Position numbers and translations under genes: made by a program. Below are positions 9,540 through 53,400 of a DNA stretch of 64,000 nt, piece after piece; position 1 is the first letter of the stretch; each line of letters begins with the position of its first letter. The notes below the pieces were generated by a model. It did no database searches and was not told where the DNA came from. It saw nothing but the letters and a program-made list of their open reading frames with translations. Where the stretch lies: contig NC_092349.1 of assembly GCF_963676685.1 (NCBI RefSeq), positions 79,236,001 through 79,300,000 on the forward strand, read 5' to 3'. This DNA comes from Mytilus edulis. Taxonomy: Eukaryota.

Positions 9540-12500
9540 TGTGGCACCGTTAAAGTCCACAATTCCTCAAAAGTCCACAACACCGCTAAAGTCCACAACA
9601 ATTTTCCGCTAAAGTCCACAACGCCGTTAAATACCACAAAATTTCCGCTAAAGTCCACAAAATGACCTCCGCTAAAGTCCACAAGAAAACTCAAGAAAAC
9701 GCCGTTAAAGTCCACAATAACAAGTTCCGCCAAAGTCCACAAAAAAGCACCGTTAAAGTCCAAACAATTTTTTTTTATTATCAAAAGATCTATTTTCTTT
9801 TTACACCCGATATTATAGATCTAATCAAAAGCATGGACTTTTATTCTTAGAAAGTATACCTTGTCAGCATAAATTATATTTTTGATGAATGAAAAAATTA
9901 TAGTATTTGCTTTATCACCATAAATGTGATCTTTGTGTTGCGATTTTCTATCAATCAAACCGACAACCTTTCTGAAAAATTATCTAGCTATTATACTCTT
10001 TTTATTCTTTAGTAAACATTTGTTCATCCACAGAAAACTCCAACATAGCGTTCCCTTTATGTATATGCTAGATATAATTTGGAGCCTATATTTGACATTT
10101 AAATTTCCTTTGCAAATATCTATAAAACATAAGTAAGATTTCCATTCAATGTTTGTTAGGCACCACAGGAGCCAAAACGGTATGTAAATCTCAAAATCAG
10201 ACTTAGAACCATCATGTTCTTGTTTGAAATCAAAATAATGATAAAGAATACCACACATTCATGCATTTGTGGTACTCAGCAGATTTCCATCACTCATTGG
10301 TATGCATGTTTGTTTTGTTTTCAAAAAGGAAATTGAATTTGTTTCAAAATGAAAGATGAATTGAATAAATTAAACGCGGTTGTGGTTCTGTATTGTGTAT
10401 TATCCATGATGTGTACAAGTATAAAGAAAATATTTTCCAGACAATATGAGTATTTAAACCGTATGCGTATACCTGAACGTATGCTCGTACCGTATGAGTA
10501 TACTCGTACGGTTTAGTACGAGCTCGGCCATACATGTCAAATTTATCAAGAGTCAGAAAATGAAATAAAAACTTTAACCAAATTCAAAAGTGACGATACA
10601 TTTTTTAGCATGAAATTGAGTTCAAATGCTCAAATTGCAATTGAAGTTATTGGAAGTACATACATGTAAATTTTGGAAGATAAGTTTTTAGAAAATTTAG
10701 GAACGTTACTTCAAAAACCGTCAAGCCAGTAAAGTATAATGGTCAGAAGTATTTGTCACCTACAATTATTTGTTATATATATCATGAAAATCTACGTATT
10801 TTCATAACAAATATTTAAGGAATATTTCATGTAGGATTTTAATCAAAATTAGTACCAATAGAAGCAAAACTCTCATAGGTTAATTTGTTTATTTGGTTAC
10901 ATATCTATTTTGAAGCGTTAATTATCAATTTCTGATGATATAACACAAAGATTATATTTTATCAAAAAAATTGAGAAAAAAAAGATTTGCAACAAAACTA
11001 ACCGAAGAAAATCCAACTGTAAATGCCGTCAAATGTATTTTCTTTTTTTGCATTCACTTGCCGATGTATTTGTGTGTTGAGAAATCCAGAACTAATAAAA
11101 TGTGTCTATGAGCATTTGAGGGTGTGGATATAGAAAGGCGATAGGAACGTTTATATTGCATTGAGCTCGAACACCAACAATTGTTGAACTATCATTGATA
11201 AAATGTAAGTCACATCAAAGCTCACGGTATGTCGCTTTCCGATTTTCTTTCTTTTTTCTCTTTTAAAGATACTTTTTTAGTATTTTGAAAAGGCTAAATG
11301 GAAGACTAGTATGAAGTTTTAAGCTGAAACTTTTACGAATGATATAACATCAAAGAATGTTTCTGTTCTTTTCAATACAATTTTATTGGTTGCTGTAGAA
11401 CAGATTTAGAGTTTTTATACATATTAATCTTGTGAGTAATTTTACATGTGATTAAAACACTTTACCAAGATAAACAACTAGTGTATGTATATGTTTAAGC
11501 CCCATTTATAGGCATTGGTTCTCTTGTTTGAATGGTTTTACACTTGTAATTTTTGGGGAACGTTATAGCTTGCTGCTCGGTGTGAGCCAAGGTTCCGTGT
11601 TGAAGGCCGTACCTTGACCTATAATTGTTTACTTTTATAAATTTTAACTTGAATGGAGAGTCTCATTGGCACTCATACCACATCTTCCTATATCGATCAA
11701 ATCAGGTTTTATTGTGACATCTTGGTAGAAACTCATTTAACGCATCGATATCCTATACTAATCGATTAAATTATTATTTAAAGCATAGAATATTTTATCT
11801 TGTATTTAGAATTTATAATAATGGCTTCATTTTCCGTTCTGAAAATCATAACACATTAATTTTCGTTGTTTTCTATAACGAACACCGAAATTAATAACGT
11901 AAAACATTGGTTAAAAGTTTTGCGACAGGAGACCTTTGGGAATTCATAAACTTAGTAGATTTTTTGTTTAATGATTTAATTCAGATTGTTGCCGGAATGA
12001 ATGCCGTGCAAATGTTATAGATTAGGAGGCACCTGTGCTTTGTACATTAATTGTGTCAAAAAGTAATTGATAATATGCAAAGAATAAGAGAAAAAAAGTA
12101 CTTGAAGAATACAGTAATCATACCTAACGAATTTACAAACTTTTTAAAAATGATGTCCAAAATGGCCATCATCATCATCATCATAATACAAAGATTAAAA
12201 TTAATGGAACAAAATCATATACAGATACTGTACTTCTTTCATGGATCAAATTGATAAAAAAAAATACTACCGAGAAGAAAGTCCATACTTTGTATTGTAC
12301 TAACGGGATAAAAATAACGAATAATATGTTTAACAATATAAAAAAAATGGTGTGGACTTTAACGGTGCTTTTTTGTGGACTTTAGCGGAACATGCTATTG
12401 TGGACTTTAACGGCGTTTTCTTGGGGATTTTAGCGGAGGTCATTTTGTGGACTTTAGCGGAAAGTTTGTGGACTTTAGCGGCGTTGCGGACTTTAGCGAA

Positions 12501-12565
12501 AATTTGTTGTGGACTTTAGCGGTGTTGTGGACTTTAGAGGAATTGTGGACTTTAACGGTGCCACA
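9540..12565. mobile_element. Non-autonomous foldback-type DNA transposon with TGT...ACA ends, ~220-bp TIRs built of ccgYtaaagtccaca subrepeats, and a 6-bp TSD
   Basis: Left end tgtggcaccgttaaagtccac at 9540 and right end gtggactttaacggtgccaca at 12565. aggcat is duplicated at 9534-9539 and 12566-12571. No transposase ORF inside. Contains a family-1 repeat at ~11515-11693. Confidence 0.9.
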
Positions 12566-14290: not shown

Positions 14291-15418
14291 TAAGTTGAGC
14301 TTTATTTACCCACGTGATTGTGGTATATATAGAGAAATATGGTCATAATTGCTTTTCCTGTGATTGGCAGTAAAACCCTAGGAAAAGTTAGGCGTCAGAT
14401 TGGCTGTTTTGGATGTACAAGTTCGCAGTCTCATTCAGAATTTAGAACGTGTTAATTTATGGCATGTTGCAAGGCAAACATTATGTAACTATCCAATAAA
14501 TCCGTGTTTTCCTGTGGCAGTCTTAATTTCCCGGACCTTCATCTTGGACGGTCTCTATTACAGGATCTTCCTATAGTATTTATTATTCACTTCTTCTCGT
14601 GTTAAACATACAGGATCAAAAAGACGATAAATAACCAACAATAAATCAATCGATCTGTATGTTCTGTTACGTATCTGTTTGTCATTATTTGCATTTCACA
14701 ACACCTAGATACATGTACATCCCCTGATTTTAATGGGGTTCTTTATTCTAAATGTATAGTTTTTGGTGTCAATTTTTCCCAATTACGAAAGCAAATTTAC
14801 AGATCTAACATTGTTGGGTAAACATCAACCCAACAATGTTAGATCTGTAAATTTGCTTTCGCTAAGTTTTTGTTCATCCCTCGCCGGGATTCGAACCCAT
14901 GCTACTGAGGTATCGTGACACCAAATCGCCTGCACTGTAGCCGTCCCGCTAGACCACACGACCACCTGGGCTTCACACTGACTAAGACGTACTTATATAT
15001 ATATATAATATACAATTCATGAATTCAGACGTACTTATGAATATAATTATTTTCTGTGACTGTATATTACATTAATTTGTAGGATCCTTTACTATAGATA
15101 ATTTAGCTGATCTGTAACAATAACATCTTCATGCCTTATATATCATGTACTGTAGTACGCCGCTAGATTAAAACTGACGTGGAAAGGTAACACATGCCCA
15201 CCGAAAGCTCTTTTTTTGAGAGCCCAGGTGGTCGTGTGGTCTAGCGGGACGGCTGCAGTGCAGGCGATTTGGTGTCACGATATCACAGTAGCATGGGTTC
15301 GAATCCCGGCGAGGGAAGAACCAAAAATTTGCGAAAGCAAATTTACAGATCTAACATTGTTGGGTTGATGTTGAGACGAGTTGTATATATATATATATAT
15401 ATATATATATACTAGATT

Positions 15419-15463
15419 AAAACTGACGAGGAAAGGTAACACACGGCCAGCGAAAGCTCTTTT
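15419..15463 (+). ncRNA. Minimal type I hammerhead ribozyme motif (array copy 2)
   Basis: aaaa-CTGACGA-g gaaa ggt..gcc ag c-GAAA-gc-TC-tttt: conserved core and palindromic AGCT helix III that would need dimerisation. Predicted cleavage after 15459. Confidence 0.6.
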
Positions 15464-15470
15464 TTTGAGA

Positions 15471-15565
15471 GCCCAGGTGGTCGTGTTGTCTAGCGGGACG
15501 GCTGCAGTTCAGGCGATTTGGTGTCACGATATCACAGTAGCATGGGTTCGAATCCCGGCGAGGGA
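15471..15565 (+). other. tRNA-derived (Leu/Ser-like, long variable arm) Pol III head, not a functional tRNA
   Basis: A-box TGGTCGTGT(G/T)G and B-box GGTTCGAATCC, T-arm GGG/CCC, variable-arm hairpin ggtgtc-ac-gatatc. Acceptor and anticodon arms are defective. Other copies at 15222-15316(+), 15921-16015(+) and 14877-14971(-). Confidence 0.8.
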
Positions 15566-15869
15566 AGAACCAAAAATTTGCGAAAGCAAATTTACAGATC
15601 TAACATTGTTGGGTTGATGTTTAGACGAGTTGTATATACATTATGTACACAGCCATGTATCACCATCATTGATGGCGATCCGATGGATACATCTGTTGTA
15701 GAGTTGTCACTGACTCAGACGTATATATACGTACTTATAAATATAATTATTTTCTGTGACTGTATATTACATTAATTTGTAAGATCCTTTACTATGGATA
15801 ATTTAGCTGATCTGTAACAATAACATCTTCATGCCTTATATATCATGTACTGTAGTACGCCGCTAGATT

Positions 15870-15914
15870 AAAACTGACGAGGAAAGGTAACACACGACCA
15901 GCGAAAGCTCTTTT
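15870..15914 (+). ncRNA. Minimal type I hammerhead ribozyme motif (array copy 3)
   Basis: aaaaCTGACGAggaaaggtaacacacgaccagcGAAAgcTCtttt, with ggt/acc pairing in stem II. Predicted cleavage after 15910. Copy 1 (15170-15214) has the core mutated to CTGACGT. Confidence 0.6.
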
Positions 15915-16134
15915 TTGAGAGCCCAGGTGGTCGTGTGGTCTAGCGGGACGGCTGCAGTGCAGGCGATTTGGTGTCATGATATCACAGTAGCATGGGTTCG
16001 AATCCCGGCGAGGGAAGAACCAAAAATTTGCGAAAGCAAATTTACAGATTTAACATTGTTGGGTTGATGCTTAGACGAGTTGTATATATATATTTACATA
16101 AGGAAGCTATCATTTGATTTTTATGGGTTTATAT

Positions 16135-16177
16135 TGGGGGGGGGGGGGGGGGGCTGGGGGGGGGGGGCGAGGGGGGA
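16135..16177 (+). repeat. Poly-G tract (G-quadruplex-prone)
   Basis: Interrupted G runs of 18, 12 and 6 nt. Confidence 0.8.
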
Positions 16178-30500: not shown

Positions 30501-33500
30501 ATTCTGGTAGATTATGCAACGAAAGTAAGTCGGTCGTATTTAAAGCCATGCACCCAAACTCGTTTGCACATATTAACATGAATATTATGAATAACTACAG
30601 ACTAATATATATTTTACTCCTCAATGTTAAATTAATTTTGAGTTTCCCTAAAGAGACATTAATTGTCTAAATGCTGATCTGATGCATTAAAATTGGTACT
30701 GTTACTGTCATTAACACACTTATTTGATGTTGAATAATGTCATCCTTATACATCATAGGCAAATATGTTGACCGTTGTTCAGATCTCATGAATCCTTTTT
30801 ATTAAAAGTCATAAAAGAAAGTCCAGTTAGAATCGAATTACGCATAAATGAGATAACTCGACTTGAAAAGGAAAGCTTCTCCTGCTATGCATTATCACCC
30901 GCCATGTCCGTATAATAAGATCATGCAACACACTTGGTAAAAAAATGGCAGACAAGTCAAATAAAAATCAAGAGATATGATATGATTGCCAATGGGACAA
31001 CAATTAACAATAATGTTAGGTAATGAGAGTATTATTTAGATCCAGTTCTTCAAAGTGTAAGTAATATAAAAAGCTGGAAATCCAAAGGACAAAATCTGAT
31101 ATATGGAAAAAAAAACAAAAACAGCGATAAGGTGTTTAACAGTTTATTAAGCAGCTAATGCATAACATCATTACTCGTTCCAAAGGAATACGTGATTTAC
31201 GTAACTGAAACAAATACTATGATAAGTAAATAATAAAGTGTTTTCCCGGTATACAATATTTTAATAATTTTTACAGATTGTCCAGAAAATTCGTTTGGGA
31301 GTGGATGTAATTCCACCTGTACTTGTGATACTCACTCAAGATGTCATCCAGTTACTGGAGAATGTCTGTGTCAGCCTGGCTTCCACGGAAAGGATTGCAG
31401 CAAAAGTAATTCAATTTTAATCAAATATAACTTGCATATCGTCCATAATTGAACGGTGTATAAGGAGTTTCACTTAATGGAGGTTTCTCAACATCTTACG
31501 AACGAACGAAAAAAAAAGAGGGAGCATTCATTTATTCAATACTTTTGGACTATCGGTTGTTATCTTCTAACGTTTGCAATTTCGTTTACATAGAAAATAT
31601 ATACATTTTGGAATTTGTAAGACCATTTAGAGTCGTAGACATATTATATTGTCTTGATATCTATAATATATGATATACAATTTACGGTTTAATCTAAACA
31701 TTTGAAAATCTAATTGGTCAATAAATCATGGCGAAGAATATAAAATATTTAGAGCCAGGACAGTAATCGTACAAAATATTTTGATTAACATGACAACATC
31801 ATTTTGAAAATATATATATGAAAAAGGGTAAATATAGAATTTTGGGATGGTAGGGAATGGGAATCTTTTTGAATCTTATCAAGGATCAGATCAGTGGAAG
31901 AAGTCTTTCGCAAACATGAGGTAAACTAATCTAAGCGTGAACGCTTTTAGCTTTTAATTTGAAAAAAAACATTCCTCGGATCCAGGGTAACTTCGTTGCC
32001 CCAACTCTTAAATCCAAATGATCACTTCTTGACCTTAAATGATTATATCTGATTTATATTCTAGCTAAACTGATAAAGTCAAGAAGATGACTAAAGGGAA
32101 ACATTGAAATAAATATTAAAAAAAAAGAAAAAAGCAGTTAACACTTTAAAAATATGTTCTGTAATGTATTTAATTTTGTTTTGCTTTGTTTTGTTTTCAT
32201 GCGATTCTTATTTTCTTTTTTAGTATATAATTATATATTATTTTTTTTCATGGAGCTTTTATGGAATGCTGTATATGTTTTCTTCGTTTTTTGTTTTTTC
32301 TAATGTTTTTCTTTTTTACTTTGGGAATGGAATTTAAAGAAAATGGACCTTTTAAAAACTATCTAACTATCATTTTTGTTGGTGCTGTAGCACTCATATT
32401 TTCAACAAGAATACACAAAACTCTATAACTTTACGATTGATCGAGTGCACCTTTATATTTCTGTAGCTTATTCCCAAAAATAATTTTAGAGCAAGTTGGA
32501 CCGATTTGACCTAATGCACATCGAGACTTTTCTGTTGGGTGCTTTATTCTAGGAGATAGAATTTACCCAAACTCACCCTCCTTTATTCGTTCCATATTTA
32601 TAACGAATGTTTGGATAATAATATAGTGGCGTATCCAGAACTTTTCATAAGGGGTGGGGGGGGGGGGGGGGGTTGCTGACTGACAGAAGAGGGGGTCCTC
32701 TCTAGATTGCGAGTTTAATCTCCCCAAATAACACACGGCTAAAAATGATCTTAACTTAAATACAAATATCTTCCTTATTTTTGGCCCTGTCGTCAGAATT
32801 TCGTATGGTCATATTTTTCTAAAAAGCCGGTTTAATGACTAGTAGTATGTTGGACTATTAGTCCCCGAGGGTATCACCAGCCCAGTAGCCAGTACTTCGG
32901 TACTGGCATGAACATACGGATTTTTTGTGTTATTAAAATTTGCTGTTACAAAATATTAGAAATTATTATAAATTAAGGAATGTATCTCCCTCATGCAAAG
33001 CTCTGATTCCTTTCACGGATTTGGCTATACTTTTTGGACCTTTTGGATTATAGCTCTTCATCTTTTATATAAGCTTTGGATTTCAAATATTTTGGCCACG
33101 AGCATCACTGAAGAGACATGTATTGTCGAAATGCGCATCTGGTGCAAGAAAATTGGTACCGTTAATTTTATTACTACCACTGGGTCGATGCCTCTGCTGG
33201 TGGACTATTAGTCCCCGAGGGTATCACCAGCCCAGTAGCCAGTACTTCGGTACTGGCATGAACATACGGATTTTTTGTGTTATTAAAATTTGCTGTTACA
33301 AAATATTAGAAATTATTATAAATTAAGGAATGTATCTCCCTCATGCAAAGCTCTGATTCCTTTCACGGATTTGGCTATACTTTTTGGACCTTTTGGATTA
33401 TAGCTCTTCATCTTTTATATAAGCTTTGGATTTCAAATATTTTGGCCACGAGCATCACTGAAGAGACATGTATTGTCGAAATGCGCATCTGGTGCAAGAA

Positions 33501-36500
33501 AATTGGTACCGTTAATTTTATTGGAGAGTTTCAACCCCCCTATTTCAAAATGAAAAGGAGTAGGTCCGGTAAGGGCCGATTTTGGCCTCAAATTTCCAGT
33601 TCATCTGACGAAAGATTTTAGACACTTTTTAAACACCTAAGTGTCTTTTTCAGCTGATTCAATTAGTTTATGTGAAAGATTTAAACTGATTTACTCATTT
33701 AAAACGCTCCGATTCTAGCTTAAATATGAAAAATCTATCAAATATGCCAAAAAATGTCACTTTCAGATGTTTTTTGTCAAAAATGAAAGTGGCCGCATCC
33801 GTGTTCATCCTTAACCTTTATATATGTTATGTATTTTCATCAAATACAACTTACATTTCAATATAAAGAATGAACACAAATGCGGCCACTTTCATTTAAG
33901 ACGGAAACCGTCTAAAATTTAACTAAAATGCTAAAACTGTGAAGATTTCAGTAATTTAGCATGATTTAATGATGCTAGTACCCGATACATGTACATTGTT
34001 TTGTAAAAAACTGCCCATATTTATGTAGCAGAAGCATTCTAGTTTCAAATAAATAACTCAAAGTTTACATTTTAACAATTTTGTAAAACTGCTATATTTT
34101 GGGGCCAAAACGTGGTTTTAGTGAACCTTCTCCTTTGTGTATGTTTGCTTACCTTTAATTGAAATGTTTTTTTCTGAAGCTATTTTCATATGTCAAAATA
34201 TTATATTCAGTACTTTAATTTCTTCTAACTTATAAAATTTGCTAAGTTTTGGCTGTTTAAAATTGAGGTAATTTTAATTGCAAATTCAGACACAAACTTA
34301 TTATAATAATAAATTTAGTTTCTTCTTCATAGTAGAAATTAAAATTATCCCATAATATTTTAAGCATATAGTATTTCGTAAAACTAGTTACTGATAAAAG
34401 TTTCGGAACCTAAATATGAAAAAAGTCTTAAGAAATAAACGGAAAAAGAAAAGAGTTAACAACTTCAATTTCAATACGGAACTTTATCACTTTCCTTCCA
34501 TCACATTTTGTGTATTAGTCAATAATTAGCTCTCAACTGATATATGAAATTACTTCCTTTTTCACTATTATATATAATTTTTTTTCGAATAAAGTGCACT
34601 AATATATGGCCCATACTTTGTTTGTATATGTTTATATTATTCTATGTTTTTTGTTATAAAACATCAAATATACTTTGTTAGAAAAGTCTCATTGTAAAAA
34701 TCAAAACAATTGACGGATTGTTTCAGTGAATATTCCGTGATGTGTACGATATGGTCAAGTCCGTTGAAACTTGCTACTTCAAGTCCAAAGAAAAGACAAA
34801 AGTCGTTAAATTTTATGCAGTACTTAATATGCCAAAAAAACATCACCGACTGAAAGTTTGAATCAATATACCAGTATAGGGAAGTCAACCTTGTTCTGCA
34901 TTGTATCTGCAATGAATAAAAGATTGGATGAGGTGAACATAAAGGTGTTTCATGCGATAGCTGTAAATTTGAAGAACTGCTGGCAGTTTACCATCGTCCA
35001 TACTTCAAAAGTTACACTAGTAAACAAAATTGTTCCCCCTTTGAGAGCGAGGATGCTTCTAACCTGAAATTTAATGACGACAGACAATTATCGGACTGTT
35101 CAGTGTCCCTCAGTTTCGGGTGTTTGTACGCGTTATAGAATGCAGTCGTTCAACTGAAGCGCTTGATATTTTGTTGCAACAAAACATTTTAGAAAGATCG
35201 AAAACAACGCAAGTTTGAATCAGATAAGTGTATTAAGAATGTTTTATCCGTGGCAGAAAGCAATGGCGATGATTTTAAAGTTGAAACAGTTTCTCGTCCA
35301 TCTTTTAAACTTCAAGCACTCTATCATTCTGGTTGCATTACAAACTATTTGCTTAAAACGAAACAAACAAAATTCCAAACCCGTGGAAGCAGAAATCTCA
35401 GATCACGATACTGCTTTTACTTATTTTATTTTGGCTTTTGACAACGATTAAATGGTGAAGAAAAGCATTCCTTATGACTACATTACTTGATAAATATAGA
35501 TGTCGTCTTCCTACTGATTCTAATTTAAAATATTCTACTTGTAAAATGCCGTTTAAACTCATTGATAACTATAGAAACTCAGTTGTAATACAACTTCAAC
35601 AAGTTCAAGGCAAATCTAACATAATATTCAGTAGCAACATAACTATTGAAGATGTCAAATCAGCTGCTAGTCAATTGCAAACTCACCTCAAAATCTCAAT
35701 GTCAACAGTAATAGACACAAATAACGCACAGATATAAAGTATACTTAGAAAAGACATCGAAACTTAACTAATTTCCACAGAAGAATACCCAACTTCGGAT
35801 TAATTGCCTCTTTTTCTTCGATTCAGGCAATGCCTTCGTATTTATTGCAATTCATTTTATGGTTACTCGATGATACTGTATACAGCCAAGTCTATTCTCA
35901 TGAAATGGCACCAGAGAAATTGCGTAAATGCTTGGCAATTAATGAGTCAATCGTTTATGTGGCCGAAAAAAGTTTTACTCCTTTTCATTTAGGTTTGGCT
36001 TCACAAATGTACCATGAGTTTGGTTCAAAATACCTTGTTGAAACATTGAATGCCAATGGATTTTATTCTTCGTAAAGTGGAGTGCGACTCTATCTAATAA
36101 CCATGATCTGAAATTGAGCGAATTCAAGATATTGTGTACATCTCGTATAATGTTTCCCCAGCATCTTTGCAGACAAGCATATGGATGTCATCACACCTTC
36201 TTAAACAACCTATTAGATCACCTATTAGATTCGGTTAAATCTTAGATGGATTGATAGGATGGTTTGAAGCCGGTATTTTTTGTGCGACAAATGTCTTCGG
36301 ACTGCCTACAGTACTTGTATGTACTTTTAAAGGCAAATCTGTGTGCTCAAAAGAACGTGTTTGCTTTGAGCAGAACCTTTCATGTACAGACCTGTGTCAA
36401 TGAGTGAAATGTGTAGAAATATTATAAAAACGTTTATTGTGACGGTTGATGAAAATGACGATAAAGAGGTAGCGTTTGATTTTATATATAGCTTGTTGCA

Positions 36501-50419: not shown

Positions 50420-53400
50420 ATGGTTAAACATCGTTGTTCATTCAGTTTGTTACTTTTATTAATTGTTAGCGATTTGACATCTGGACTAAGTATTACAGAT
50501 GACCATACATGCTCTAAATATATACGGTCAGTACTTACATCAGTAAATGCTACTTAGATCTCATATTAATAATGACATTTGTTCTCTATTGCATATATAT
50601 TGACCAATTTTAGACAGCTTTTTATTGTTTATTGATGAATGTATGATACGTTTCATGTTTTCGAACGAAGCATCTACAGTTGCCTTTGAATTTGCATTCA
50701 CCGTTTTACGTTCATGATATAGATAAGCATATGTACTGACGGAATTAAAAAGAGGAACTCTAAATCAGCCCGCCTACATACAATTTAACTATTCATTTCT
50801 TGGAGTAACGTAATTATTCATCTTTTCCATTTCATGACCATGAAACTGTTGTTATGTGCACAGTATGATAGATTTGTAAAGAACATTTAAATCTTAATTG
50901 AGAAATCCTAACATTTGGTTGTTAATAAAAAGAATAAGGTAGCCTTTTTGTGCTTCTTTGTTCCATTTTTTTTAATAGTAATTGAGATGATAACATGATG
51001 TTGGCTGCAGTATTCTTTTATTTACTTATTGTGTCTGGTTTGTTCTTGTGTTCACATATCTTTGTCAATATAATGGACTTTGATGCGACTGAATTGTCAT
51101 ACAAGCTAGATGTTTAGCTAGTTATCAAACCAGGTTCAATCTACTATTTTCTACATAAGAAAATGCGTGAACCAAGTCAGGCAGTTCAGTAAATTTATTG
51201 TTTTACGTTATATAAAAAAACAAATTATTGAAAAATCATTAGTTCTTTTAGCACCTTACATATTTGAAGTTTGTAGAATAAATGTTGAAAAGCAGCTAAA
51301 CTAATTTGTTCATTTTTTGAACCGACAATTTAAAGCAATCATTGGTTACAATTGTTTGTTTGTATAAAACAAATATATTTTAACACCCCAGTTAAAACCT
51401 CTATTCAACATAACTTAGCCTAACGTTGTAAGACACATTCTCTAGTACGAACTCTGGGTTTATATACATTTCCTTTACTTACTCTATGGTCAAGGATATT
51501 TCTGCTAGTGTGTGTCAAAGATTGTTATAGGCTATGATTGTTCTTCTGGTATCTTTCGCTCCTATTCTATAGACAATGTCTTTGTATCATAACTACTTAA
51601 AAAAAAATATTTGTATTGCTTCGTGTACGGTAGATACATTTTATATATTGTGCCCCTTTCCCTTTTTGTTTTGTTATAAAGGAGTAGTAAGGGCGTATCA
51701 TATTTTTGTCGTGCTCATCACATATAAATTCTAATCATAATCTTGAGTAATAGTTTGTGTCTTCGAAAATATATTAGCGTATGGGCGTTGCATCTGAGTC
51801 TTATCCCGTGTTTTAATTGAGTTTATGTTGCCCAATATTTAGTTCAGTATGAGGCTTCTGTTGACTGTTGTTTGTCTGATTAACTCATCATTTATACCAG
51901 GATTGTAATTTGGTATTGCACCAGACACTCGTTTCATCTACAAAAACTCATCAGTGTCGTTTGAATATAAAAAAAAAGTTTAATAGGGAAAACAATTAAT
52001 TAAAAAAAGCATTGAAGACCACTAATTCCTAAACGTTGATGTTTTTGTTTTATTTTCTATTTGTATTTGCATCCTAGGTTTCTTTTATGAATTAAAGTAT
52101 ATATTTCATTTTCATGGATTAGTTGCTTTAGTCTTACTACTGAATTGTCATATAGCTCATCAACGGTTTCGGTACTTATACATCCTCGGATTTCAAATGT
52201 TTGGCTTTGAGTGTTCCTGATGAAGGTAAATCCAGAAAAGCGCTACGAACGCATTGATATAATTAAACGTTTTGTTTTCAATTTTTTACCGATAACAATC
52301 TATTTCGCCAATACATTTATACCATTATATAAATATTTAATTAGTTCTTCTCAAGTAATTTGGAGTGAATATAATTTAATAATTTTATCCTTCATACCTA
52401 TGATTTAGGGAAATAAGACATATAAAAAGAGGAGTTACCAAATTGGTGTAAAATATTTCATTTATTTATTCAAAATGTTGCAAATGTTTTTTTCTATTGA
52501 TATGATTTGCCTTCGATAAATGCTATTGACTCTGTAAGTCTTTGAATGTGAAAAAAGGATGAACGTCGCTATGAAGGGATCAAATTAAATAAAGGCAACA
52601 GTAGTATACCGCTGTTAGAAATTCATCAATCGATTGAGAAAAACACAAATCCGGGTTTCAAACTAGAACTGATGGAAACACATCAAATATAAGAGACACA
52701 ACAGAAACACAACATTAAAATTTAACACACACAGAAACGAACTAAAATATAACAATGGCCTTTTTCCTGACTTGGTACAGGATATTTTAATGACAAAAAT
52801 GGTGTGGGCATACCAAACCTTCCGCTTTTATGGCAATGTTAAATATAACATTAAATGACATCATTATATGATAGGACTACAATACGAATGAATGGGAGAA
52901 CATATAGGACAGAGAAGCACACGAATCATAGTAAACAAAAGCTAACAGGTTTAAAATTTTATACGCCAAACTCGCGCTTCGTCCACTCAAGACCAACAAG
53001 GCCAGTGAGACTCCGATGTTAAAGTTTGAATGCCAAAATTACCGATTTTAATAAAAATTTTGAGCTGAAAAAAAATTAACAAAAGAGCATTATTCAAAAC
53101 AGTTCATTTAGGGAGATTTGTTGTTTTGTTTTATGAACCTATAGATTTAATAAAACATTTTATTATGTTGTTTAACATTAATAAAACACTTAGTTTCAGA
53201 TAAGGGTGAGGGTTGTTAACATAAAAACGTTTAAACCTGCTGCAATTGTTTGCAACTGTCATAAGCCTGGAATCTGATGTTCAGAACTTGTCGTTTGATT
53301 ATGTGGTTCTCGTTTTTTGTTTCTTTTATAAAGATTAGATCGTTGATTTTCCCGTTTGAATGATTTTACACTAGATATTTTTGAGCCCTTTCTAGCTTGT

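What the first reader, a model, noticed from the sequence alone, without database searches (positions are those of the whole stretch)
14786..16092. Candidate new element: tandem units coupling a minimal hammerhead ribozyme to a tRNA-derived Pol III promoter
Seen in sequence: each 451-bp unit has aaaa-CTGACGA-stemII-GAAA-gc-TC, then T6-7, then within 5 nt a tRNA-like head with A and B boxes, a GAAA-tetraloop hairpin (aaatttgc-gaaa-gcaaattt) and further hairpins. Stem II varies between copies while retaining pairing (ggt/gcc, ggt/acc). Known: minimal HHRs with a short palindromic helix III occur in Penelope-like elements and act as dimers, and the schistosome Sm-alpha repeat is a precedent for a tRNA-related repeat carrying an HHR. 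Inference: this is a self-transcribing SINE/retrozyme hybrid. Pol III would start at one head and end at the T-run that also forms the 3' strand of stem I, or read through, with cleavage after 15459 and 15910 releasing a 451-nt monomer able to circularise. I do not know of this arrangement being described in bivalves. Caveats: stem I is only 4 A-U pairs, copy 1 has a core mutation, and an internal T4 could stop Pol III early.
Basis: partly seen in the sequence, partly recalled or inferred. Interest (0 to 1): 0.85.

Follow-up and report, generated by a model that had tools for sequence, protein, structure and literature searches.

The report
tRNA-headed tandem retroposon, hammerhead look-alike
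The repeats are real copies of a very abundant, transcribed mobile element of a mussel-type genome that carries a tRNA-type promoter and inserts into (TA)n repeats, but its "hammerhead ribozyme" is a chance look-alike, not a conserved part.

Summary
The repeat, the T-run and the A/B-box head are real. The window does not hold a clean 451-bp tandem. It holds an inverted copy plus two adjacent 5'-truncated arrays of a 441-nt family with about 2,000 array ends and over 4,000 units genome-wide.

The hammerhead reading fails:
- 64% of units, and 81-93% of RNA reads at the core position, carry CTGACGT rather than CTGANGA.
- A homologous sister family lacks the core boxes.
- Stem II does not adjoin the core, and the proposed fold is +1.8 kcal/mol against -43.5 for a competing hairpin.
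- Rfam finds nothing here, yet finds canonical hammerheads elsewhere in this genome.
- RNA reads cross the predicted cut site with no pile-up of ends.

The element is a tRNA-derived SINE module of about 170 nt ending in GTTGTA(TA)n, plus a conserved ~260-nt extension ending in a T-run. Its RNA folds into a rod. Copies have a fixed 3' end, scattered 5' truncations, (TA)n flanks and head-to-head inversions. This fits target-primed reverse transcription of longer-than-unit RNA, probably by Penelope-like element enzymes (inferred).

This scan reached much the same reading on three other pieces of this genome. I found no published description.

The parts
14783..14861 (.). Snap-back palindrome. A short + strand piece (consensus 119-155) folds back on the tail part of the inverted copy.
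   Evidence: (I4: 34-nt arms, 100% complementary)
14819..14972 (-). Inverted SINE module (consensus 11-164). Its 5' end lies at the expected Pol III start and sits head-to-head with array 1. A and B boxes lie at 14887-14956.
14975..15024 (+). Junction filler: a partial duplicate of consensus ~247-268 plus TA-rich sequence.
   Evidence: read directly
15025..15210 (+). Array 1, 5'-truncated unit (consensus 256-441). The hammerhead-like string at 15174-15210 has CTGACGT.
15211..15383 (+). Array 1: T7 plus the terminal SINE module (consensus 1-179). A box starts at 15237, B box ends at 15306. It ends in GTTGTATATA.
15384..15411 (.). (TA)14. It is the tail of array 1 and the insertion target of array 2.
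15412..15459 (+). Array 2, 5'-truncated start (consensus 394-441). The hammerhead-like string at 15423-15459 has CTGACGA.
15460..15910 (+). The one complete unit (451 nt; consensus is 441). T7 at 15460-15466. Head from 15470, with A box 15486-15497 mutated to TTGTCT... and B box 15545-15555. SINE tail at 15630-15638. Conserved extension at 15639-15910. Hammerhead-like string at 15874-15910.
15911..16093 (+). Array 2: T6 plus the terminal SINE module and (TA)n tail. Unique flank begins at ~16094.
15860..15946 (+). Long imperfect hairpin across the T-run. Consensus 391-441 pairs with the head's 5' half (consensus 8-37). The hammerhead-like core lies in its 20-nt bulge.
   Evidence: -43.5 kcal/mol; the same architecture is found in sister family B

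Best explanation
The region is a cluster of insertions of a young, high-copy, non-autonomous retroelement of a Mytilus-type genome.

Anatomy (shown). The unit is 441 nt and has two parts.
(a) A tRNA-derived SINE module of about 170 nt. It has A and B boxes, two hairpins and a 3' end GTTGTA(TA)n.
(b) A conserved ~260-nt extension that ends in a T-run just before the next head.
The unit RNA folds into a rod. In that rod the end of the extension pairs with the 5' half of the head.

Propagation (inferred). An endonuclease nicks a (TA)n microsatellite. The freed TA 3' end pairs with the internal UAUAUA at consensus 174-179 of a sense RNA that is longer than one unit (multimeric read-through or circular). 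Reverse transcription then runs 5'-ward for anything from ~90 nt to more than 7 units. This gives a fixed 3' end, scattered 5' truncations and tandem arrays. Priming from both sides of the palindromic target gives the head-to-head and tail-to-tail inversions.

Enzymes (inferred from circumstantial evidence). They are most likely those of Penelope-like elements.

Promoter and terminator (inferred). The A/B-box head is a plausible Pol III promoter. Some copies start at consensus 6-11, where Pol III would start. However, the T-run is read through both in RNA and in the copies, so it does not set the unit.

The hammerhead-like string is a chance resemblance. A derived T-to-A change in a minority subfamily completes it, inside a bulge of the long stem.
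For: Family size and ends:
- At least 706 candidate loci, with copies 94-96% identical.
- The 3'-end string plus (TA)4 occurs 983+972 times; the control gives 0.
- Arrays end at consensus ~179 plus (TA)n. Their 5' ends scatter between 6 and ~440. Array lengths run from 88 nt to more than 3.4 kb. Flanks are often (TA)n.
- 5 of ~52 5' ends fall at consensus 6-11 (about 0.7 expected).

Promoter boxes: 3 hits against 0.00 expected.

Sister family B:
- A 175-nt SINE, 99% identical copies, at least 741 candidates.
- It has the same (TA)n ends and also forms 475-bp tandem units.
- It is homologous to family A over the whole unit.

Rod fold: MFE -142 kcal/mol, z = -6.5 for A and z = -4.2 for B. The head/3'-arm stem is kept in B through changes on both strands.

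RNA: 10-100-fold strand bias, with coverage of the whole unit including across the T-run.

Penelope-like link:
- 4 of 11 GIY-YIG hits on C1:0-53 Mb lie within 2.2 kb of listed array ends (0.09 expected).
- A 5'-truncated GIY-YIG element copy is fused head-to-head to a 5'-truncated SINE module, with tails outward (L055).
- Penelope-like copies here also end in (TA)n (L067 and L055).
- Published (TA)n bias and tandem/inverted insertions of Penelope-like elements in bivalves (PMC8557442).

Against the hammerhead.
Against: - No autonomous element with a shared 3' domain was found. Only TTGTA(TA)n is shared with one Penelope-like copy. A LINE that targets (TA)n is therefore not excluded.
- The nature of the template (multimer or circle) is not resolved, because tandem DNA makes head-to-tail reads uninformative.
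- The strand of the RNA rests on the usual library convention and was not calibrated.
- Pol III use is unproven. No pile-up of RNA 5' ends was seen at consensus 6-11, and the T7 is read through.
- An unexplained pile-up of RNA ends at consensus 414 is not accounted for.
Confidence: 0.75

Rival explanations
1. This is a functional minimal (dimer-forming) type I hammerhead coupled to a Pol III promoter. It cleaves after GCUC to release 441-451-nt monomers that circularise, making the element a SINE/retrozyme hybrid.
For: - CTGACGA...GAAA-GC-TC followed by T-runs is present in 2 of 3 window copies.
- AGCU is a palindrome, as in dimeric Penelope-type minimal hammerheads (from memory).
- The same genome holds true hammerhead retrozymes.
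- The unit RNA is rod-like and is made as head-to-tail RNA.
Against: - 2586 units carry CTGACGT and 1455 carry CTGACGA, and both variants form long arrays.
- T is ancestral, because sister family B has CGTG there.
- RNA reads carry the A at only 7-19%.
- Family B has CTTCCGT / TGAAG / TTAT in place of the three boxes.
- Five unpaired nucleotides separate the core from the proposed stem II. Stem I is 4 A-U pairs, and stem III is 0 bp in a monomer.
- The proposed fold is +1.8 kcal/mol against -9.9 for the local MFE and -43.5 for the competing hairpin.
- No Rfam hammerhead hit at E<=10 in 1.7 kb, whereas canonical copies in this genome score 33-42 bits.
- No RNA ends at the predicted sites, where depth is ~450-800 across 2825|2826.
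- Genomic copies end at consensus 179, not at the cleavage site.
Confidence: 0.05
2. The element is the same, but it is mobilised by a LINE (non-LTR) partner with a (TA)n tail, like ordinary bivalve SINEs, rather than by Penelope-like elements.
For: - The SINE module has the classical head/body/simple-repeat tail layout, and solitary full-length copies exist.
- 5' truncation is typical of LINE-type reverse transcription.
Against: - No LINE with this tail was seen.
- The element associates with GIY-YIG copies and is physically fused to one.
- Two-sided inverted structures with both tails outward, and insertion into (TA)n, match published Penelope-like behaviour.
Confidence: 0.15
3. It is a Helenus-type TRIM, meaning a small LTR retrotransposon with a tRNA-like sequence in its LTRs, or a plain satellite expanded by unequal crossing-over.
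For: - Helenus elements with tRNA-like LTRs and tandem arrays are reported in pteriomorph bivalves (PMC10886601).
- The units are tandem.
Against: - Array 5' ends are scattered, not at an LTR start. There are no TG..CA termini, no primer-binding site or polypurine tract next to a repeat end, and no 4-bp duplications. The flanks are (TA)n.
- About 2,000 dispersed array ends, mostly shorter than one unit, argue against a satellite.
Confidence: 0.03

Closest known systems
Non-LTR retrozymes of Mytilus galloprovincialis (Cervera & de la Pena 2020, PMC7229834)
   Same: Short tandem units, AT-rich and highly self-paired RNA, abundant head-to-tail RNA, the same host, and probable dependence on Penelope-like elements.
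   Different: - Those units (350-390 bp) carry a canonical type I hammerhead that Rfam detects in this genome.
- There is no sequence similarity to this unit.
- This unit has no conserved hammerhead but has a tRNA-type head.
- A real (decayed) member of that family sits elsewhere in the window (32851-33522).
Penelope-like elements of bivalves (Naiad and Neptune types; Craig et al. 2021, PMC8557442)
   Same: (TA)n insertion bias, 5' truncation, partial tandem and inverted insertion structures, (TA)n 3' ends of local copies, and physical association.
   Different: This element has no ORF and a tRNA-type promoter head. No shared 3' UTR was demonstrated.
tRNA-derived SINEs of bivalves, including tandem-like and palindromic SINE structures (PMC11481361; PMC4758252)
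   Same: A/B-box head, short body, simple-repeat tail, solitary full-length copies, and occasional tandem and palindromic arrangements.
   Different: - The repeating unit here is SINE plus a conserved 260-300-nt extension ending in a T-run.
- The reverse-transcription start site is internal to the unit.
- None of the described conserved central domains was recognised (not tested against Dfam or Repbase).
Schistosome Sm-alpha SINE-like repeat with an active hammerhead (from memory, not checked here)
   Same: A Pol III-type repeat in which a hammerhead motif was proposed.
   Different: Sm-alpha's hammerhead is canonical and active. Here the motif fails conservation, structure and RNA-end tests.
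Helenus / TRIMp3 (Kojima 2024, PMC10886601)
   Same: A non-autonomous retroelement with a tRNA-like Pol III-type promoter that forms arrays and is present in pteriomorph bivalves.
   Different: Helenus has LTR-PBS-PPT-LTR structure with 4-bp duplications. None of these features is present here.

Membership tests
Hammerhead ribozyme (type I / minimal Penelope type) | Conserved core CUGANGA ... GAAA ... UH | tested here: not met
   The full core is present in only 36% of exact-match genomic units and 7-19% of RNA reads. It is replaced in sister family B. The bare motif is at chance frequency in the window.
Hammerhead ribozyme (type I / minimal Penelope type) | Helix II starting directly after the core, with helices I and III able to form | tested here: not met
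   Only one G-C pair adjoins the core; the other three proposed stem II pairs come after a 4-nt by 2-nt internal loop. Stem I is 4 A-U pairs. Stem III is absent in a monomer. The fold is +1.8 kcal/mol against -43.5 for the competing hairpin.
Hammerhead ribozyme (type I / minimal Penelope type) | Recognition by covariance models | tested here: not met
   No hammerhead family hit at the gathering score or at E<=10. Canonical copies in the same genome score 33-42 bits.
Hammerhead ribozyme (type I / minimal Penelope type) | Self-cleavage at the predicted site | tested here: inconclusive
   No pile-up of RNA ends at the three predicted sites, and full depth across 2825|2826. Re-ligated circles or rare cleavage would not be seen. 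No bench test was possible.
Non-LTR retrozyme | Tandem units that each carry a type I hammerhead | tested here: not met
   Tandem units are present, but the hammerhead is not (see the rows above).
Non-LTR retrozyme | Unit-length circular RNA | not testable with these tools
   Head-to-tail reads are abundant, but the DNA is tandem, so they do not show circles.
tRNA-derived SINE | Internal Pol III promoter (A and B boxes at tRNA-like spacing) | tested here: met
   Both boxes are perfect, with a 47-nt gap. There are 3 hits against 0.00 expected. The boxes are conserved between families A and B.
tRNA-derived SINE | Head recognisable as a tRNA | tested here: not met
   ARAGORN finds none. The Rfam tRNA model gives no hit even on 109-126 nt.
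tRNA-derived SINE | Solitary short copies with a defined 5' end and a simple-repeat 3' tail; dispersed, with 5'-truncated copies | tested here: met
Penelope-like-element-dependent non-autonomous element | Insertion signature of Penelope-like elements: (TA)n targets and tandem plus inverted structures | tested here: met
   compared with PMC8557442.
Penelope-like-element-dependent non-autonomous element | 3' end shared with an autonomous partner | tested here: inconclusive
   Only TTGTA(TA)n is shared with one local copy, and BLAST of two local 3' UTRs was negative. No more genome sequence could be fetched.
Helenus / TRIM | LTR-PBS-PPT-LTR with 4-bp target duplications | tested here: not met
   Scattered 5' ends, an internal fixed 3' end and (TA)n flanks.

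The most novel reading that the evidence does not exclude
This is a ribozyme-free counterpart of animal retrozymes. A tRNA-headed, Penelope-like-element-dependent element would have a rod-shaped unit RNA that is processed at a conserved bulge motif (CGUG-R-M-AAGGUAACAC). A sharp RNA end lies in that motif at consensus 414. The processing agent would be a host nuclease or an undescribed self-cleaving fold. The RNA would then be copied round and round, either as a circle or as a panhandle-closed linear RNA, to give the tandem arrays.
Probability: 0.12. Interest if true: 0.8.

Novelty: new variant of a known kind. Interest (0 to 1): 0.5.

Why it matters
The finding removes a false ribozyme call. 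It also defines an abundant, currently transcribed element family whose class does not seem to be described. The family has SINE-type Pol III heads attached to a conserved extension. It forms rod-like RNA and tandem arrays, and it carries the insertion signature of Penelope-like elements.

If the partner is confirmed, this would be a clear SINE-like parasite of Penelope-like elements. It would also be a natural comparison for hammerhead retrozymes in the same genome, because it shows that tandem-array formation does not need a ribozyme.

The family also matters for mussel genome annotation. Thousands of tRNA-like promoter boxes and (TA)n-linked arrays could be mis-called as tRNA pseudogenes, satellites or ribozymes.

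Tried and rejected
- Rfam at the gathering score and at E<=10 gave no hammerhead, other ribozyme or tRNA. Only spurious miRNA-type hits fell on the palindrome.
- ARAGORN found nothing.
- The known mussel retrozyme family has no similarity to this unit.
- I tested whether the extension is an inverted copy of the SINE module. The local alignment score is not above shuffles (11 against 12.6 +/- 2), so the complementarity is structural, not a recognisable duplication.
- The apparent cluster of array starts near consensus 256-274 is probably joining at a TA-rich internal stretch, not a defined end.
- I tested concatenation of Pol III transcripts by end-to-end template jumps. It is disfavoured, because the junctions keep a full T7 (mode 7) plus a templated GAG.
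- I looked for within-family compensation between the 3' arm and the head. There is none.
- BLAST of two local Penelope-like 3' UTRs against units A and B gave nothing significant.
End statistics therefore rest on about 50 arrays.
- The strand of the RNA libraries could not be calibrated.

Full report
WHAT IS IN THE WINDOW. They do not form a regular 451-bp tandem. Repeat finding and BLAST against a family consensus give the following layout:
- A snap-back palindrome at 14786-14861.
- An inverted copy of the tRNA-like module at 14819-14972 (minus strand, consensus 11-164).
- A short junction.
- Array 1 at 15025-15383 (consensus 256-441 plus 1-179), ending in (TA)14 at 15384-15411.
- Array 2 at 15412-16093 (consensus 394-441, one full 451-nt unit, then 2-179 plus a TA tail).

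The 249-bp and 450-bp spacings therefore come from two separate, 5'-truncated insertions. The second insertion went into the TA tail of the first.

THE FAMILY.
- The window lies on contig C6 of a 1.37-Gb assembly with 14 large contigs.
- Canonical hammerheads found in it match the published Mytilus galloprovincialis retrozyme sequence, so this is a Mytilus-type genome.
- The unit has at least 706 candidate loci, and the best copies are 94-96% identical.
- A consensus of 64 units is 441 nt.
- The 3'-end string followed by (TA)4 occurs 983+972 times, against 0 for the reversed control.
- The bulge string occurs 2586 times with CGT and 1455 times with CGA.
- Public runs of five organism labels hold the sequence.

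THE HAMMERHEAD READING FAILS ON FIVE INDEPENDENT TESTS.

1. Conservation within the family.
- Position 9 of the core is U, not A, in 64% of exact-match units genome-wide and in 51 of 74 instances in fetched loci.
- Both variants form long arrays, so the A is not needed for spread.
- In RNA reads the A is seen at 14-19% at one unit and 7-8% at the next.
- About three quarters of the reads come from the subfamily that always carries U.

2. Conservation between families.
- A sister family B is a 175-nt SINE in 475-bp tandem units. It is homologous to family A along the whole unit.
- At the three core boxes B reads CTTCCGT, TGAAG and TTAT.
- The neighbouring CGTG..AAGGTAACAC is conserved between the families.
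- This also shows that U is ancestral and the A derived.

3. Structure.
- After the first G-C pair, a 4-nt by 2-nt internal loop precedes the proposed stem II.
- Stem I is four A-U pairs. Stem III does not exist in a monomer.
- The proposed fold evaluates at +1.8 kcal/mol. The local MFE is -9.9 kcal/mol, and a hairpin across the T-run that uses the same nucleotides is -43.5 kcal/mol.

4. Models and chance.
- No hammerhead family matches, even at E<=10 on 1.7 kb.
- The same model finds 26 canonical copies above its cut-off elsewhere in this genome.
- The bare CTGANGA-N8-38-GAAA motif occurs 10 times in the window against 4.6 +/- 2.1 expected by chance.

5. RNA ends.
- Four 2026 RNA runs were laid on a 2.4-unit array.
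- Depth runs straight across the predicted cleavage site. It is about 450-800 in the bin spanning 2825|2826, equal to the neighbouring bins.
- No pile-up of molecule ends is reported at any of the three predicted sites.

WHAT THE ELEMENT IS.

The first ~170 nt of the unit after the T-run form a SINE module.
- It has a perfect A box and B box 47 nt apart. The combined pattern matches 3 times in the window against 0.00 expected.
- It has two hairpins and a 3' end GTTGTA(TA)n.
- It is not a foldable tRNA.
- Solitary copies of this module exist for both families. They start at the first head nucleotide and are flanked by TA repeats.

The remaining ~260 nt are not a random flank. They are conserved between families A and B.

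The unit RNA folds into a rod.
- MFE is -142 kcal/mol with z = -6.5 for A, and z = -4.2 for B.
- In the rod, consensus 391-400 and 421-432 pair with the head's 5' half.
- The stem is kept in B through changes on both strands, for example C-G to A-U and U-A to A-U.
- The hammerhead-like core sits in the 20-nt bulge of this stem.
I tested it here.

HOW IT SPREADS (INFERRED FROM COPY ANATOMY).

About 50 arrays were examined. Thirty came from similarity hits and 20 from unbiased 3'-end hits.
- The 3' end is always at consensus ~179 followed by (TA)n.
- The 5' end is scattered over the unit.
- Lengths run from 88 nt to more than 7 units, with a median near 260 nt in the unbiased set.
- (TA)n often flanks both sides.

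This is the signature of target-primed reverse transcription with 5' truncation. It starts at an internal UAUAUA of a sense RNA that must be longer than one unit, because copies run back through the head, the GAG and the full T-run (mode T7) into the preceding unit. That rules out two ideas: units bounded by two ribozyme cuts, and units bounded by a Pol III start and stop.

Five of ~52 5' ends lie at consensus 6-11, which is 16-21 nt upstream of the A box, against about 0.7 expected. So some templates probably start at a Pol III-type start site.

Head-to-head pairs with both tails pointing outward are common. Examples are the window itself, L004, L016, L018, L056 and L060. They fit priming on both strands of the palindromic target.

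THE LIKELY ENZYME SOURCE.
- Penelope-like elements dominate bivalve genomes, prefer (TA)n and make tandem and inverted insertions (PMC8557442).
- In this genome, 4 of 11 GIY-YIG endonuclease hits on C1:0-53 Mb lie within 2.2 kb of a listed array end, against 0.09 expected.
- Two local 5'-truncated GIY-YIG copies end in (TA)n.
- In L055, one is fused head-to-head to a 5'-truncated SINE module with both tails outward. That is what two-sided priming on two different RNAs by one machinery would give.
- I could not show a shared 3' domain, so a LINE partner remains possible.

RNA.
- Reads are 10-100-fold strand-biased in three stranded libraries and cover the whole unit. Transcription is therefore driven from within the element.
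- By the usual convention the RNA is the sense strand, but I could not calibrate the libraries.
- 22-26% of molecules reaching consensus 414 (GUGGA|AAGG, in the conserved bulge) have their first-mate start exactly there. Adapter read-through confirms real fragment ends, and no matching downstream fragment start is seen.
- On the sense reading this is an RNA 3' end in the exposed bulge. On the opposite reading it would be an antisense start 28-34 nt downstream of the A7 (TATA-like in family B). This is unexplained.

COMPARISON AND NOVELTY.
- The element works like a SINE in promoter, tail and copy anatomy. It also works like a non-LTR retrozyme or Penelope-like satellite in its tandem units, rod RNA and TA targets.
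- It fails the defining test of a retrozyme, which is the ribozyme. It fails the tests of a Helenus TRIM, which is an LTR structure.
- My literature searches found no description of a tRNA-headed, TA-targeting tandem element in mussels. Dfam and Repbase could not be consulted.
- This scan had already met the family on three other pieces of the genome and reached similar readings.
- I rate it a new variant of a known kind, of moderate interest.

Noticed in passing
window 32851-33522: A 350-bp tandem with 1.9 copies at 100% identity. Its unit matches the published Mytilus retrozyme Mg353 (shared ...GAGGGTATCACCAGCCCAGTAG...). Its hammerhead is degenerate (CTGAAGAG...TCGAAATGCGCATC at 33108 and 33458) and Rfam does not detect it.
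   Followed up: partly
window 51932-51954 (minus strand): A solitary decayed copy of the canonical mussel retrozyme hammerhead (CTGATGAG-tttttgtagat-GAAAcgagtgTC), below Rfam thresholds.
   Followed up: no
L007:2355 (consensus 414 of the unit; equivalent to window ~15432 and ~15883): A sharp pile-up of RNA fragment ends (221-298 molecules, 22-26% of depth, in three runs) inside the conserved bulge motif CGTG..AAGGTAACAC. No matching downstream fragment start is seen. The cause and the strand are unresolved.
   Followed up: partly
L064, L066, L067, L068 (e.g. L067:550-1675): Sister SINE family B. It has a 175-nt module in copies ~99% identical (at least 741 candidates), (TA)n on both sides, and 475-bp tandem units built like the 441-nt unit. 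It looks very recently active.
   Followed up: partly
L055:2190-2806: A 5'-truncated GIY-YIG (Penelope-like) copy on the minus strand is fused head-to-head to a 5'-truncated SINE module on the plus strand. Both have (TA)n tails pointing outward.
   Followed up: partly
window 16136-16176: A 41-nt near-pure G tract about 40 nt downstream of the array end.
   Followed up: no
window 12351-12558: A minisatellite with an 18/23/41-bp period (TTGTGGACTTTAGCGGAG-type unit).
   Followed up: no
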